NCBI GenBank assembly: GCA_001179505.1
Contig: CDMY01000447.1
Location: 124,001-188,000, forward strand
Length of the DNA stretch: 64,000 nucleotides
Reading direction: 5' to 3'
Source of the DNA: Vitrella brassicaformis CCMP3155
Taxonomy: Eukaryota; Protista; Chromerida
Shown here: piece after piece, positions 5,338 to 56,196 of the stretch
Layout of the letters: each line of letters begins with the position of its first letter
How positions within the stretch are numbered: position 1 is the first letter of the stretch
The notes under the pieces: model-generated
Seen by the model: the letters and a program-made list of their open reading frames with translations, nothing else
Told to the model about the DNA's origin: nothing
Database searches by the model: none
Program-made: the position numbers and the translations under genes

Positions 5338-7036
5338 ATGGTTCGATGGATGGATGGATGGGGCGTGTGTGCATTGTATCTATCCATCTTGTCTGGCTGG
5401 GGTGTCTGTCTGTCTGTCTGTCTGTCGTGGAGTAAGTCGCTTACCAGTCAATGTTCGTCCGCTCGTACAATGTATTCATGTATATGTCGGGAGAGCGAGG
5501 GCGAGGGAGAGAGAAGCGAGGCGAGGATGTCGAATGAAGTTTTGCACGGACGCGCCCGGTGCATCCGTCTGTGTGGCGGTCGTACACCTCCTGTTGGTAA
5601 CGGATGGCGAGCAGTGTTTCCCCACGCTGCTCACCACCGGTTGCCAGCGGGGGAGTGACGAACTCAACACGACGGACACGGGGCGCAGCCCAGCACACGT
5701 CTGTGGCTCGTAAGATTGAGAGAGAAGGAGAAGAATGTTTTGCCTGCTTGCCTACAGTCAGTGAGTGTACATTGCCTGTAACAAACATCATTCGGGGGTG
5801 GGCCTGCACCGCGTCGTGTCGTGTCTTGTCTTGTCCTGATATGCCGTCTTTTATATACATGTGAGTCTGTCAGGTCGGTCATGTCATGTCATGTGTGTGT
5901 GTCCGTCTGTCTGTCTGTCTGTCTGGTGTGCGTACGGGAATATCCACACATACATATACACACATCGATCGATGCATATACACGTACTGACTGCATGGCA
6001 TGAATGCATTGTATGTGGGTGCGCTATGTGCATTGCCGAGTGGCTGGCTGACGAGTGGCTGACGGTAGTCACCCTCACCACATCGTCAGACAGCCACATA
6101 AGCGGCAACGGAGACGTTCCATGGATGGATGGATGGATGGGTGCGTGCATACCAACCCGGGCTGACCCACTCACTCAGTGCATTGCATTGCATTGCATTG
6201 CATGGCCATTCATTCGTTTCTCACGTGGCTGCATGTCATGTGTGAGCATGTGATGTGATGTGTATGTGTGCTTGTACGTGTGCCCACATGTATGTATGTA
6301 TTTATCTATCGCCTTTATGGGGGACAGCTGTCTGTCCTGTCGGCGCTCTCTCGTCGACACGTGACCTGACGTGGGTGTGGTGTGCAGAAGGACGGAAGTG
6401 GTTGGGGTGGGATGGGCTGAGTGAGTGCCTCTCTCTCGACTTGATTCACTGCTGGGCCTGCTGGCCGCCTGGGTGCACTTTTCGAAACGCAGGCAGGCAG
6501 GCAGGCAGGCAGGCAGACACAAGAGATGACGACTCTCTCACCCACTCACCCACTCAACTCACCGACGTTCAGCTGGCCGACAGGACTCCGCTACTTTTTG
6601 TCCTTCCATGGGTGCCTCTGCCGTGCCGTGGATGGATGCAAGTGCATGTCCGTGTGTGTGGGCATGCGTATGTATGTGTGTGAGAATGGTGGGTTTGTAT
6701 GGGTTTCATGCAGTGACATACCATTGCAATGCAGTGTGGTGGATACGACCGACCGACTTGTCATCTCCCCTGAACAGAACACGATCGCAATGGATGAATG
6801 AATGAGAAAGCCTTCTCGCCGTCAGCAGGGTTTCGGGTTTTAGGGTTTCGGGGAATTGTAGCTCGCATTCCGAACTCGTCGTGTTTTTGCTCAGGCGTCG
6901 CGTGTAGACTGTGCACGGTTTGATCAGTGATCTAGCATCGCTCAATTGCTGGATACGCTTCTTCGCCGAGACATCGATCCCTAACGTACGTCGGAGGGAG
7001 GCAGATGTTGCCGTGACGTGAGGCGCTGAGCTGACG

Positions 7037-23994: not shown

Positions 23995-24177
23995 CGCTCA
24001 TCCAAAGGCAAGATCGTCGACGAAAGTCCGATCAGCGGGGGTTGCCAGGTGCGCCCCGTGCTGCGCCGCTATGAAATTCGTTCAACTCAGCAACAAGGCT
24101 CGCAACAGAAGGCTAAGCTCGCACTGTGGTTGGCACAACAGAGCCCGTCTTTCGTCCGGTAGTACGAGTCAGTCGTC

Positions 24178-24762
24178 ATGGTCCGCATCACACGTCCCGA
24201 AACGCCTGTGCCGCCAGGCACCGGCAAGGGGAAGGGCAAGGGCAAGGGCAAGGGAGGCTTCGTCACCAAACGACACACTGTGCCACGCGACACCATTCTA
24301 GGTAGGTGACAGACGGACAGCTAGATGTGCACACAAGAATCAACACATCCAAATGGTCGCATTTGACTCTTGTGTGTGTTCGGTTGACAGGCATCACGAA
24401 GCCAGCGATTCGTCGCCTGGCACGCCGGGGCGGCGTCAAGCGGATCTCGGCGCTCTGCTATGACGAAATCCGCGCGACGCTCAAAAATGTAAGGCAGCGC
24501 CCGCAGGCAGTGGAGGTTCACTCACTGGGGTGTGTGTGTGTGTGTGTCAGTTCCTGGAGAATGTCATCAAGGATGCCGTCCTGTACACCGAATACGGCAA
24601 CCGGAAGACCGTCACTGCTGTGGTCAGACAGAGAGAAAGACACAGGGGATGCAGCTCACTTCGCTGTGTTCTGTTCCGTGTCGTTTCTCACTCTTCCCAC
24701 TGCAGGATGTGTTGTATGCCCTCAAGCGCCGCGGCAGGACGCTCTACGGCTACGCTGACTGA
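24178..24762 (+). CDS. Divergent histone H4 variant, 4 exons (24178-24301, 24391-24488, 24551-24622, 24706-24762)
   Basis: Spliced product: [116 protein letters not shown]. The H4 core [20 protein letters not shown] is unmistakable and all three introns are GT-AG and frame-preserving. AATAAA at ~24895-24900. Confidence 0.95.
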
Positions 24763-25233
24763 TCAATGGGAGCCGGTGCACACATCAGGATACGCAGCCT
24801 GTTAGCTTAGAGGGAGTGGGGATGGGTGAGGGAGGGGGGGAGGGAGGCATAAACGAAGTGCTGGCGGCAGAGACCAGACAGACACCCGCTGTGGAATAAA
24901 GGGGCGGTGTTGCCCTTTTTACTTGTGTATTTGCCTATAGGATGGATGGGTGGGTGGCTGGGACTGGGGCTTGTATGTAGTGGTCGACGTAAGGACGTAC
25001 ATTACGTTACGTACTCGTGTACCCGATGACATTGTCTCCCTGCCTTCTTTGCTCCGCTTTGTGTGCTTGCCCGGCAGCTTGTGACTGAGTGAGAAAATGC
25101 CATGTACAATAGCTTGCCGGCCGGTGAATCGTGGACTGGACGTGCCAATGTGAAAATGATCTGAAGACTCGTACTTCGCATGAATGTCCGTGAACTGAAA
25201 TTGCGATGATTTTGTCCGAGTGCATAAATCGTC

Positions 25234-26983
25234 ATTTGGTGTATCGTTTGAGGTTTCTTGCGAGGTCATGCAGAACATCAGGGTGCGGCTGCAGGGTGGC
25301 CAGCATCCTGCGCCACTCATCACACTCACACACTTGACTGTACCAACACAACCACACAACCACACACACACACGCAGATTCATGTCATGTGCCGTGTGGG
25401 TGTTTTGTATCATTCTGTGTATACCCAGGGGTCCGTTCGAATCTGGCCATGAGACAGGGCAGCGCGCGGCAGTCCTCCCACGGCCCCCTCTCCTCCAACA
25501 CCATCGACCGCTCTATCGCATCCTCCCGGTGAAATCCGCCGTCAGCCTCTTGTGCAGCAGCACTCTCGGCCTCGTCGGCGATTGGCAGCGGAGTCCTCTT
25601 GGGAAGGAGGTCAGAGTGCGGCGGCTGCGTGAACAGGAGGGGCAGCTCGATGGTGAAGATCTCCTGCAGCTCCTGCACGAACAACAGGTCGTCCTCGACA
25701 CTCCGCAGGTCCGCACTCAGCGTCTCGAAGGCCGCCTCCCTCTGCTCAGCAAGGAAGGCCTCACGCAGCCGCTTGGGCAACGTCTCCTGCACACGCGCAC
25801 ACAACGTCGAAGAGACGGGTGGTGCTGATGAGACGGGCCAGCACTGAGCTCACTTACTTCAACTGCTCGGTCGGCAATGGATGTCTGTCGTGGGCCGCCA
25901 GGCGGCCTCGATGGCAGCCCGAACACCTCTGGGGGCGGCTCCTTGCGGCAGTGGCAGAGTGCGTTGAGGACGCCCAGTTGTGTGCGTGTTGCGGTGAGGT
26001 GCCTGTCGGCCTGGTAGAGCATCCTCTTGTCGAAGAACAGCACTGCCAGGTGGTAGTAGAGCGACAGCTCTTCCGTGAAGGACTTCTGCTTCCTCGCCAT
26101 GCGGGCCGTCAGGTCCTTCTCCTCTTCTCTGTGATGGTTTGTCTGCCAGGGAAGGGAAGAAAGAGCTCGTGAGACACCCATCCCATCGCGAGTACGTATT
26201 TCTCCGTGTGGTGTGGTGTGGTGTCTGTCTCCCTACCAGTCGATGGATAACGGTGAGATTGTGACGGGCACAGCCCTCAGGAAGGCCTGCACAACCATCG
26301 GAAAACACCTGCTGATTGATGTTGTGTGTTCTGCAGGCCAGCCATACCCACCCCTGTCTCTTAGAAGGTCACACGCCAGCTGCGCCTGTTGCCTCGCCCA
26401 CTCAGCCTTGCCCTCATCCCTATGCACACGCCAAGTAACCGGCCAGCCATCAGATCCGCTCGACACAGCGTCCGCCTTCCTTACCAGTATCGAACAGAGA
26501 GGTTGAAGTACGCCAGCACACGAGTGATGAACGCCTTGCACAGCCGCTCGACCTCAGAAACGACAGGACGTGAGACGGCCAGAGCCGCGTAGCGACCCCT
26601 TTGCGCTTCTCGGGCCAGTGTCGTCGCGGTCTCATCACGCGGACGCAATCTGATCGGAGGGATCTCACGTCACCCACATCCCAGCCACGGGCACGCCAAC
26701 TGTCGTCTCTTCACCTCTTTGCCTCCCGGAACTCCTTCTCTGCGAGGCGCCACAACTTGGCCTCTCCCTCCGCCGATGAGGGCTCCTCTGCGTCCTCCCC
26801 CAAGCCTTCCTCGTCCCCTCCCTGGACCTGCCATTGCCTTTCTTCCTCTTGGCGTCTCCGGCTCGAGTTGATCTGCCGGAAGTACGACTTGCCGAGCTTT
26901 AAGTGGAGATCGAAGTACTCGCCTGTGGTTGGCGCAAAGGCCTTGCGGCTTGGACCGCCGGCGGCTGTCGCTTTCTTCATCAT
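25234..26983 (-). CDS. Hypothetical helical (TPR-like) protein, multi-exon; boundaries approximate
   Basis: Coding-like exons MMKKATAAGG...EKEFREAKR, EVERLCKAFITRVLAYFNLSVRYW, SFTEELSLYYHLAVLFFDKRMLYQADRHL and ETLPKRLREAFLAEQREAAFETLSADL, separated by GT-AG introns. No family recognised. Confidence 0.6.
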
Positions 26984-56112: not shown

Positions 56113-56196
56113 GGCAGCATGGCTGAGTGGTTTTCTGGCGATGCCTTGCTAAGGCATTGAGCTGTGCCCGCGTAAGATCGAATCCTGCTGTTGTCG
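56113..56196 (+). tRNA. trnS-GCU: tRNA-Ser(GCT), structurally divergent (possibly a pseudogene)
   Basis: Acceptor stem GGCAGCA/TGTTGTC with discriminator G. A-box TGGCTGAGTGG. Anticodon stem ATGCC/GGCAT, loop TTGCTAA (GCT at 56148-56150). Long variable arm. T-arm GTAAG-ATCGAAT-CCTGC. T5 terminator immediately downstream. Confidence 0.85.

What the first reader, a model, noticed from the sequence alone, without database searches (positions are those of the whole stretch)
24178..24762. Divergent histone H4 variant with a rebuilt tail and no K20-equivalent
Seen: an intact four-exon gene encoding a 116-aa H4-like protein. The tail is [15 protein letters not shown]-(GK)5-GGFVT instead of SGRGKGGKGLGKGGA. 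The basic patch K16-R-H-R-K20-V-L-R becomes K-R-H-T-V-P-R, losing R19/K20. Core changes include SGLIYEETRGVLKV to [21 protein letters not shown] to TEYGNRK (H75Y at the H4-H2B interface) and a C-terminal FGG to YAD. Known: H4 is among the most conserved proteins, and bona fide H4 variants are rare (trypanosomatid H4.V is one example). K20 methylation and the basic patch govern chromatin compaction, acidic-patch contact and ISWI/Dot1 activation. Inference: this is a specialised nucleosome variant, possibly stage-specific, in a chromerid, that escapes K20 marks and changes octamer stability.
Basis: partly seen in the sequence, partly recalled or inferred. Interest (0 to 1): 0.78.

Follow-up and report, generated by a model that had tools for sequence, protein, structure and literature searches.

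The report
Divergent histone H4 variant in Vitrella
The alga Vitrella brassicaformis, a free-living relative of malaria parasites, has an ordinary histone H4 and also this spliced, selectively maintained H4 variant, one of two sister genes that lack lysine 20, the normal N-terminus and the normal C-terminal end; such variants are rare for H4, and its function is untested.

Summary
Window 24178-24762 (+) is an intact four-exon gene with three GT-AG introns.

- **Identity:** it equals the database record CEM13700.1 / A0A0G4FJC1 of Vitrella brassicaformis CCMP3155. The same ORF is listed from an MMETSP transcriptome assembly, so the spliced mRNA exists.
- **Not the only H4:** Vbra_20047 (A0A0G4EA45) is a conventional 103-aa H4 with KRHRK and GFGG.
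- **A two-gene family:** the paralogue P0138 lies on another contig; the scan noted it before on other DNA (s1-221716). Both share an N-terminal extension with a P-x-T-P-[VL]-P motif. Both read KRH-x-V-P-R, with no basic residue at 19-20. Both share L22P, H75Y, A76G, K77N, M84V, V87L and Q93R, states nearly absent from 307 other H4s.
- **Selection:** the pair is a clade (support 99/97). dN/dS is 0.20 with dS about 1.3, and this copy has the shorter branch, so it is not decaying.
- **Untested:** stage specificity, nucleosome incorporation and octamer stability.

It is best read as a replacement H4 with a weakened basic patch and changed H2A-H2B docking surfaces. It is a new member of a known but rare kind.

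The parts
24160..24162 (+). In-frame stop codon (TAG) upstream of the start codon; fixes the start at 24178
   Evidence: the protein has no other methionine.
24178..24301 (+). Exon 1: N-terminal extension ([13 protein letters not shown]), the (GK)5 tail, K16-R17-H18 equivalents, then T-V-P-R-D-T-I-L. Ends in phase 1 inside the Gly codon equivalent to G28.
   Evidence: no Pfam hit for this exon alone.
24302..24390 (+). Intron 1, 89 nt, GT-AG
   Evidence: its removal is required to give P0121, the ORF also found in the MMETSP transcriptome.
24391..24488 (+). Exon 2: helix alpha1, loop L1 and the first half of alpha2 ([32 protein letters not shown])
   Evidence: E 1e-12 to H4 chains.
24489..24550 (+). 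Intron 2, 62 nt, GT-AG, phase 0 (between N74 and F75)
24551..24622 (+). Exon 3: rest of alpha2, loop L2 and the start of alpha3 ([24 protein letters not shown]); holds T71L, H75Y, A76G, K77N and M84V
24623..24705 (+). Intron 3, 83 nt, GT-AG, phase 0 (between V98 and D99)
24706..24762 (+). Exon 4 with stop codon: alpha3 and the C-terminal strand ([18 protein letters not shown]); holds V87L, Q93R, F100Y, G101A and G102D
24895..24919 (+). AATAAA hexamer (24895-24900) overlapping an 8-9 bp hairpin (24898-24919), 133 nt after the stop. Candidate poly(A) signal, unverified.
   Evidence: The hairpin is no better than shuffles (z -1.0). No Rfam histone stem-loop in 24700-25700 at E up to 10.

Best explanation
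This is a functional, lineage-specific histone H4 variant gene of Vitrella brassicaformis (CEM13700.1). It is one of two old sister genes that exist beside a conventional H4.

Shown: the gene is intact and spliced. Its exact ORF occurs in a transcriptome assembly. It keeps the whole H4 histone fold and the invariant DNA-binding block. With its sister it shares a set of derived residues that have been preserved while synonymous sites became nearly saturated.

Inferred mechanism: it replaces ordinary H4 in a subset of nucleosomes and changes three things.
1. The tail. The SGRGK N-terminus (the S1/R3 modification and N-terminal acetylation site) is replaced by a 13-residue extension with a conserved P-x-T-P-[VL]-P motif, which fits proline-directed kinase sites. 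The acetylatable GK lysines and K16-R17-H18 are kept. R19/K20 are gone and L22 is proline. K20 marks are therefore impossible, and the basic patch is weakened. That patch contacts the neighbouring acidic patch and activates ISWI- and Dot1-type enzymes. The prediction is less compact chromatin that responds less to remodellers.
2. The H4 face of the H4-H2B four-helix bundle and loop L2 (T71L, H75Y, A76G, K77N, M84V, V87L, Q93R).
3. The C-terminal strand that pairs with the H2A docking domain and with Asf1 (FGG to YAD).

Changes 2 and 3 predict altered tetramer-dimer stability, or a preferred H2A-H2B or chaperone partner. The absence of a histone stem-loop and the solitary position away from other histone genes fit replication-independent expression.
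For: - Gene model and identity with P0121.
- Organism, accessions and the MMETSP transcript ORF. Locus on CDMY01000447.1, with no histone neighbour within 6 kb. Single copy in the window.
- H4 identity: E 4e-40 to PDB H4 chains. The AlphaFold model has helices 45-53, 56-89 and 97-107 and a disordered tail. The top 50 Foldseek matches are all nucleosomal H4.
- Conventional H4: the Vbra_20047 sequence is printed in a paper's supplement. By my reading it differs from the eukaryote consensus at 8 of 102 positions, and from this variant at 21 of 80 positions from R23 onward.
- Sister gene P0138. Its spliced RNA contig from ERR558152 and its genomic locus.
- Shared derived states L22P, H75Y, A76G, K77N, M84V, V87L and Q93R each occur in 0-2 of 307 other H4s.
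- Clade of the two genes: 99/97 support, stem 0.48, terminal branch 0.15 for this gene against 0.59 for the sister.
- Selection: dN 0.26, dS 1.28, omega 0.20 (fold 0.14, tail 0.36). pN/pS bootstrap interval 0.25-0.50, Fisher p 4e-11. 41 of 82 conserved residues use different codons.
- Among 24 aligned H4s, only the two Vitrella variants lack any basic residue between H18 and R23.
- No Rfam histone stem-loop in the 940 nt after the stop.
- The roles assigned to individual residues come from established nucleosome structure and biochemistry, recalled from memory, not from a tool.
Against: - No protein-level evidence and no evidence of chromatin incorporation.
- Expression rests on one database annotation (an exact MMETSP ORF). 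No reads could be examined, so level, stage and 3' end are unknown.
- Unlike its sister, this protein was not found on any Logan RNA contig. That may mean lower expression, or may reflect index limits.
- omega is a pairwise average and cannot be assigned cleanly to this branch. The shorter protein branch is indirect support only.
- Whether Vitrella methylates H4K20 at all is unknown.
- Vitrella's conventional H4 also differs from the consensus at positions 84, 87 and 93. Part of the 'interface' signal may therefore be lineage drift of the H4-H2B contact rather than a variant-specific function.
- Pfam scores fall just under the gathering cut-offs (27.1 against 28.1; 24.3 against 26.4).
Confidence: 0.75

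Rival explanations
1. This protein, alone or with its sister, is Vitrella's bulk replication-coupled H4, and the conventional-looking Vbra_20047 is the minor form. The finding would then be a derived 'canonical' H4, as in dinoflagellates, not a specialised variant.
For: No expression levels could be obtained. Other myzozoans (dinoflagellates, Perkinsus) have very derived H4s (PMC4751559).
Against: Vbra_20047 is 92% identical to the eukaryote consensus and keeps K20, the basic patch and GFGG. That implies strong ongoing constraint, typical of the bulk histone. The variant gene is single-copy, solitary and away from other histone genes. No histone stem-loop was found. The two variants have diverged 30% from each other, which is unlike bulk H4 genes.
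Confidence: 0.08
2. It is a histone-fold protein that has left the nucleosome. It would work as a soluble partner of an H3-like or other histone-fold protein, for example in a TAF/SAGA-type or centromere-type complex.
For: The Pfam hits are to general histone-fold families (CENP-T_C, CBFD_NFYB_HMF, TAF) and lie just under their cut-offs. The dimer-docking surfaces and the C-terminus are altered.
Against: The block [19 protein letters not shown] and R78-K79-T80, which contact DNA in nucleosomes, are unchanged. Identity to ordinary H4 is about 75% over the fold. The acetylatable GK tail and K16-R17-H18 are kept. All sequence and structure matches are to nucleosomal H4.
Confidence: 0.07
3. It is a decaying duplicate with no function.
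For: It is very divergent for an H4. There are no read-level expression data, and no orthologue was found outside Vitrella.
Against: The ORF is intact and all three introns have GT-AG borders. An exact spliced ORF is present in a transcriptome. omega is 0.20 with dS about 1.3. Its terminal branch is shorter than its sister's. Rare derived residues are preserved in both copies.
Confidence: 0.03

Closest known systems
Vitrella brassicaformis paralogue CEM23183.1 / A0A0G4G447 (P0138; earlier scan note s1-221716)
   Same: Same genome. Shares the N-terminal extension with P-x-T-P-[VL]-P, the KRH-x-V-P-R tail without R19/K20, and L22P, H75Y, A76G, K77N, M84V, V87L and Q93R. Also has four exons. The two form a clade with 99/97 support.
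   Different: 70% identical overall (82 of 117 aligned columns). The sister has a truncated C-terminus (RTMFM) and a longer branch (0.59 against 0.15). It has a second Met that could give a shorter tail. All three of its introns lie at other positions.
Trypanosomatid H4.V (Talbert et al. 2012 nomenclature, PMC3380720; Siegel et al. 2009 as cited in PMC3156773)
   Same: A lineage-specific H4 paralogue in a protist that exists beside a conventional H4.
   Different: Independent origin is inferred, because the Vitrella pair sits next to apicomplexan-type H4s in the tree. No trypanosomatid sequence was fetched, so orthology was not tested directly. The genomic role of H4.V (marking the ends of transcription units) has no counterpart shown here.
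Human H4.G / H4.7 (PMC8015243, PMC11742582)
   Same: An H4 variant with changes at H2A, tetramer and dimer contact sites and an altered C-terminal end. H4.G is reported not to form stable nucleosomes in vitro and to loosen chromatin, which is the behaviour predicted here from the C-terminal and interface changes.
   Different: H4.G is 85% identical to H4, is truncated by five residues and keeps the normal N-terminal tail with K20. The Vitrella variant is about 75% identical in the fold, has a rebuilt and extended tail, and is full length.
Oikopleura dioica H4t (PMC3156773)
   Same: A stage- or sex-specific H4 variant whose tail changes lie at positions 21-22, next to K20, in the stretch that meets the acidic patch.
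   Different: H4t has only three substitutions and keeps K20. Stage specificity is shown for H4t and is untested here.
Divergent H4s of dinoflagellates, Amoebophrya and Perkinsus (Marinov and Lynch 2015, PMC4751559)
   Same: Myzozoan relatives with elongated, highly derived H4 variants beside more conventional ones. That paper used Vitrella H4 sequences as outgroups in its H4 tree.
   Different: The paper's text does not describe a Vitrella variant. No dinoflagellate or Perkinsus protein came up among the closest hits.
H4 variant group of Rhytidocystis sp. ex Travisia (TSA GHVS; P0196, P0208-P0210) and a Logan contig of SRR28036163 (P0168)
   Same: An N-terminal extension, an altered 18-22 stretch (KRF-R-P-K-L or KRF-K-N-F-R) and Q93R. 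P0196 also ends in YGYD, like YGYAD here.
   Different: This group keeps SGRGK-like GRGKGGKGLGKGGA, H75, A76 and M84L. Sister-group status with the Vitrella pair is neither supported nor rejected (p-AU 0.47).

Membership tests
Histone H4 (core histone) | Histone fold: alpha1 - L1 - long alpha2 - L2 - alpha3 | tested here: met
   The AlphaFold model has helices 45-53, 56-89 and 97-107, with pLDDT 78-94 over the fold. The top 50 Foldseek PDB matches are all H4 chains, probability 1.00.
Histone H4 (core histone) | Closest by sequence to H4 rather than to H3, H2A, H2B or other histone-fold proteins | tested here: met
   phmmer against the PDB gave 99 distinct sequences; the 60 listed are essentially all named histone H4, best E 4e-40 over residues 14-115. 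Word and exhaustive searches return H4s at about 75% identity.
Histone H4 (core histone) | Invariant DNA-binding and alpha1-L1 block ([17 protein letters not shown]), and R78-K79-T80 in L2 | tested here: met
   These columns are invariant in the 24-sequence alignment, this protein included.
Histone H4 (core histone) | Canonical tail: N-terminal SGRGK, the signature G-A-K-R-H (PROSITE pattern, recalled from memory) and the basic patch K16-R17-H18-R19-K20 | tested here: not met
   The tail starts [13 protein letters not shown] and the signature reads V-T-K-R-H. H18 is followed by T-V-P, with no basic residue before R23.
Histone H4 (core histone) | C-terminal ...LYGFGG | tested here: not met
   The protein ends LYGYAD. 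F100Y, G101A and G102D each occur in 0 of 307 other H4s.
Histone H4 (core histone) | Pfam family score above the gathering threshold | tested here: inconclusive
   PF15511 scores 27.1 bits against a cut-off of 28.1, and PF00125 scores 24.3 against 26.4. The collection's precomputed table nevertheless lists PF15511 for this protein.
Histone H4 (core histone) | Forms H3-H4 tetramers and nucleosomes | not testable with these tools
   Needs reconstitution or chromatin proteomics.
Histone variant (non-allelic paralogue of a core histone, in the sense of Talbert et al. 2012) | A separate gene encoding a distinct sequence, beside a conventional H4 in the same genome | tested here: met
   The conventional H4 Vbra_20047 / A0A0G4EA45 of the same strain is printed in supplementary file 3 of PMC7996758. 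The variant is CEM13700.1 on CDMY01000447.1.
Histone variant (non-allelic paralogue of a core histone, in the sense of Talbert et al. 2012) | Expressed and maintained by selection | tested here: met
   The exact spliced ORF is in an MMETSP transcriptome. omega is 0.20 against the sister gene, Fisher p 4e-11. No read-level check was possible.
Histone variant (non-allelic paralogue of a core histone, in the sense of Talbert et al. 2012) | Replication-independent, polyadenylated mRNA without a histone stem-loop | tested here: inconclusive
   No Rfam Histone3 match in the 940 nt after the stop at E up to 10. An AATAAA lies 133 nt after the stop. Vitrella's own stem-loop type was not available for comparison, and no transcript 3' end could be seen.
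Trypanosomatid H4.V | Orthology with the kinetoplastid H4.V clade | not tested
   No kinetoplastid sequence was fetched. The nearest neighbours in the tree are apicomplexan-type H4s, so an independent origin is inferred.

The most novel reading that the evidence does not exclude
Chromerids, or at least the Vitrella lineage, evolved an old two-member H4 variant family. Its nucleosomes cannot carry the S1, R3 or K20 marks and have a weakened basic patch. They carry instead a phosphorylatable P-x-T-P switch on a new N-terminal extension, and they have a re-fitted H2A-H2B docking surface that selects a particular dimer or chaperone. This would define a distinct chromatin state, for example in zoospores or sporangia, or at particular genomic boundaries. 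It would be a rare case of an H4-based chromatin state comparable to those built on H3 or H2A variants.
Probability: 0.3. Interest if true: 0.72.

Novelty: new member of a known kind. Interest (0 to 1): 0.55.

Why it matters
H4 is the most conserved core histone, and reviews count very few variants (PMC8015243, PMC11742582, PMC3380720). Here an H4 paralogue has kept its fold and DNA contacts for a long time. Meanwhile it lost the N-terminal SGRGK, R19/K20 and the C-terminal GFGG, and gained a conserved extension. That makes it a natural experiment on what the H4 tail's basic patch, K20 and the C-terminal strand are for. Vitrella is a culturable, free-living relative of apicomplexan parasites, so the variant also bears on how chromatin toolkits changed on the road to parasitism. 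The pair of sister genes shows which residues matter: seven shared, otherwise almost unseen substitutions cluster on the H4-H2B/H2A docking side. This gives a directly testable hypothesis for reconstitution experiments.

Tried and rejected
1. **Exon-by-exon searches by reference**. Exon 1 has no family hit. The exon 2 word search was swamped by ordinary H4s. The exon 3 search returned the database's own record P0121, and I used that id for all full-length searches. The joined model itself was never sent to a search tool. It was assembled only inside scripts from window.fa, for translation, for tblastn against the window and for dN/dS.
2. **Exhaustive representatives search**. 6968 hits, but the top 150 are ordinary H4s with mispredicted extensions. 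The only variant-type hit is P0155, an intron-retaining form of the sister gene. No orthologue was seen outside Vitrella, but more divergent ones ranked lower cannot be excluded.
3. **Two metagenome scans** were blank. The degenerate pattern should have matched the JGI contig L004, which I already held. That record type is evidently not in the scanned collection, so the blanks say nothing.
There are no read-level data on splicing, 3' end, level or stage.
It was left out of every tool and script and compared by eye only. A three-way branch test of selection was therefore not done.
6. **Histone stem-loop.** None was found by Rfam. A hairpin at 24898-24919 is no better than shuffles.
7. **Shared promoter or 3' motifs between the two sister genes.** Only short matches at chance level.
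8. **Intron folding.** None of the six introns folds better than shuffles.
9. **Literature.** No paper mentions the accessions of either variant, nor an H4 variant in chromerids.

Full report
**What is there.** The stretch 24178-24762 on the + strand holds a four-exon gene. Splicing the exons 24178-24301, 24391-24488, 24551-24622 and 24706-24762 in a script gives a 351-nt reading frame and a 116-residue protein. The introns are 89, 62 and 83 nt, and all have GT-AG borders. An in-frame TAG lies at 24160-24162, and the protein has a single methionine. The unusual N-terminal extension is therefore not an artefact of start-codon choice. Every sequence detail in the finding is correct.

- Exon 1 has no family hit.
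- Exon 2 matches H4 chains of solved structures at E 1e-12.
- A word search with the ORF that carries exon 3 returned a single protein, P0121.
- P0121 is identical to my model.

All full-length searches then used that database id. The joined model itself was not sent to any search tool; it was built only inside scripts from window.fa.

**Identity of the record.** P0121 is CEM13700.1 / UniProt A0A0G4FJC1, auto-named 'Histone H4', of Vitrella brassicaformis CCMP3155. The collection also lists it as the ORF of Transcript_12252 in an MMETSP transcriptome assembly and as a EukProt entry. The gene sits on contig CDMY01000447.1 at 148178-148762. Its neighbours are non-histone genes: a BTB-domain protein and several proteins without domains. 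It is the only H4-like sequence in the 64-kb window.

**It is an H4.**
- The whole protein matches H4 chains of nucleosome structures at E 4e-40 over residues 14-115, and the listed matches are named H4.
- An AlphaFold model built from a 24-sequence alignment has the three helices of the histone fold (45-53, 56-89, 97-107) at pLDDT 78-94. Residues 1-32 are low-confidence.
- Its 50 best Foldseek matches in the PDB are all nucleosomal H4.
- Pfam's general histone-fold models score just under their cut-offs.
- The block [17 protein letters not shown] and R78-K79-T80 are unchanged.

**It is not Vitrella's only H4.** A proteomics paper prints, in its supplement, the sequence of A0A0G4EA45_VITBC (gene Vbra_20047). 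This is a 103-residue H4 of the same strain, with SGRGK, KRHRK and GFGG.
- By my reading it differs from a consensus of 307 H4s at eight positions: V21I, G56A, L62M, K77R, M84F, V87I, Q93N and L97I.
- It differs from the present protein at 21 of the 80 positions from R23 to the end.
It was left out of all tools and compared by eye only.

**It has a sister gene.** The full-length word search found a second Vitrella protein, P0138 (112 aa, CEM23183.1 / A0A0G4G447), on contig CDMY01000562.1. Its 656-nt gene matches the earlier scan note s1-221716, so the scan has seen this family before on other DNA. A spliced RNA contig from run ERR558152 and an intron-retaining JGI contig carry it.

The two proteins share features that almost no other H4 has:
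- an extension of the form M-(R)-V-[RK]-I-x-x-P-x-T-P-[VL]-P;
- the stretch V-T-K-R-H-x-V-P-R, one residue shorter than KRHRKVLR and without any basic residue between H18 and R23;
- L22P, H75Y, A76G, K77N, M84V, V87L and Q93R, each present in 0-2 of 307 other H4s.

**Phylogeny.** In a careful maximum-likelihood tree the two are sisters, with 99/97 support on a long stem (0.48). This gene's terminal branch is short (0.15) and the sister's is long (0.59). Their nearest neighbours are apicomplexan-type H4s.

**Selection.**
- Between the two coding sequences, dN is 0.26, dS is 1.28 and omega is 0.20. omega is 0.14 in the fold and 0.36 in the tail.
- pN/pS is 0.36, with a bootstrap interval of 0.25-0.50. 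The excess of synonymous change has Fisher p 4e-11.
- Half of the identical residues (41 of 82) use different codons.
- The duplication is therefore old, and there has been no recent gene conversion. The shared derived residues have been kept by purifying selection.
- The value is a pairwise average. That this copy has the shorter protein branch argues that it is at least as constrained as its sister.
- A branch test with the conventional H4 as outgroup could not be run.

**Relatives elsewhere.**
- An exhaustive search of 1.84 billion cluster representatives found nothing closer than ordinary H4s (about 75% identity), apart from an intron-retaining form of the sister gene.
- No Chromera protein appeared among the best 120 word-search hits.
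- Two metagenome scans were blank, but a contig I already held should have matched and did not. Those blanks are therefore uninformative.
- A separate H4 variant group occurs in the agamococcidian Rhytidocystis (TSA GHVS, identified through PMC7522995) and in one Logan contig. It has an N-terminal extension, an altered 18-22 stretch and Q93R.
- Joining that group to the Vitrella pair is neither supported nor rejected (p-AU 0.47).

**How it most likely works.** The shown facts are an intact, spliced gene with an assembled transcript; a conserved H4 fold with intact DNA contacts; and derived residues under selection. The rest is inference from established nucleosome biology, recalled from memory rather than from a tool.
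- *Lost from the tail.* The new tail removes S1 and R3, so their modifications and N-terminal acetylation of SGRGK are lost. It also removes R19 and K20, so no K20 methylation or K20-dependent readers are possible. The basic patch is weaker for acidic-patch contact and for ISWI- and Dot1-type activation.
- *Kept in the tail.* Five GK lysines in G-x-G-K-x-G-like contexts and K16-R17-H18 remain.
- *Gained in the tail.* The conserved P-x-T-P motif fits proline-directed kinases.
- *Docking surfaces.* The shared substitutions at 71-77, 84-87 and 93, together with the changed C-terminal strand, lie on the side of H4 that packs against H2B, pairs with the H2A docking domain and binds Asf1. I therefore expect altered dimer-tetramer stability or partner choice, as reported for human H4.G (PMC11742582).
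- *Expression mode.* The solitary position, the lack of an Rfam histone stem-loop within 940 nt and an AATAAA 133 nt after the stop fit replication-independent expression.

**Caveats.**
- Whether Vitrella methylates K20 at all is unknown. A 2013 survey found no Set8 in Chromera or colpodellids.
- Vitrella's conventional H4 is also unusual at positions 84, 87 and 93. Part of the interface signal may be lineage-wide.
- There are no protein-level data.

**Comparison with what is known.** H4 variants are few: trypanosome H4.V, human H4.G, Oikopleura H4t and the divergent H4s of dinoflagellates and Perkinsus. No paper mentions either Vitrella accession, or an H4 variant in chromerids. Marinov and Lynch used Vitrella H4 sequences only as outgroups. 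The gene is annotated automatically as 'Histone H4'. I file it as a new member of a known but rare kind: a lineage-specific H4 variant, here a two-gene family.

Noticed in passing
window 24302-24390, 24489-24550, 24623-24705; L002 6080-6177, 6244-6339, 6441-6563: The two sister H4 variant genes each have three GT-AG introns, and none of the six positions is shared. This gene: inside the G42 codon, N74|F75 and V98|D99. The sister: inside the K27 codon, inside the R49 codon and A82|V83. This points to an intronless ancestor with independent intron gains, or to wholesale intron turnover after duplication.
   Followed up: partly
same six introns: All six introns are CA/GA-rich near the donor and TG-rich near the acceptor, as in note s1-221886. 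None folds better than dinucleotide-preserving shuffles (z from -1.4 to +0.5).
   Followed up: partly
window 24895-24919; L002 about 6758-6775: AATAAA overlaps an 8-9 bp hairpin 133 nt after the stop. The words AAAGGGGC...GGTG recur about 100 nt after the stop of the sister gene. The hairpin is not significant (z -1.0) and the shared words may be chance.
   Followed up: partly
P0196, P0208-P0210 (Rhytidocystis sp. ex Travisia forbesii TSA GHVS); P0168 = L005 48-392 (Logan SRR28036163): A second group of H4 variants in or near Apicomplexa. It has the extension MTKV.HE..., KRF instead of KRH, altered residues 19-22 and Q93R, and in Rhytidocystis a YGYD end. It is apparently undescribed. Host contamination of the transcriptome was not excluded.
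   Followed up: partly
P0183 (ENA/Logan, organism unknown): An otherwise ordinary 102-aa H4 independently carries H75Y and A76G (TEYGRR) and ends in GFA.
   Followed up: no
L004 (JGI 3300017148, Ga0186167_114117): A transcript contig of the sister gene retains its 123-nt third intron. That intron is in frame and free of stops, giving a 153-aa reading (P0155).
   Followed up: partly
window 56113-56196 (+): tRNA-Ser (anticodon GCT), the only Rfam or ARAGORN hit in the window.
   Followed up: no
PMC7996758 supplementary file 3 (Vbra_20047): Vitrella's conventional H4 itself departs from the eukaryote consensus at positions 84, 87 and 93 (M84F, V87I, Q93N). The variants changed the same three positions in other ways, which hints at lineage-wide remodelling of the H4-H2B contact.
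   Followed up: no
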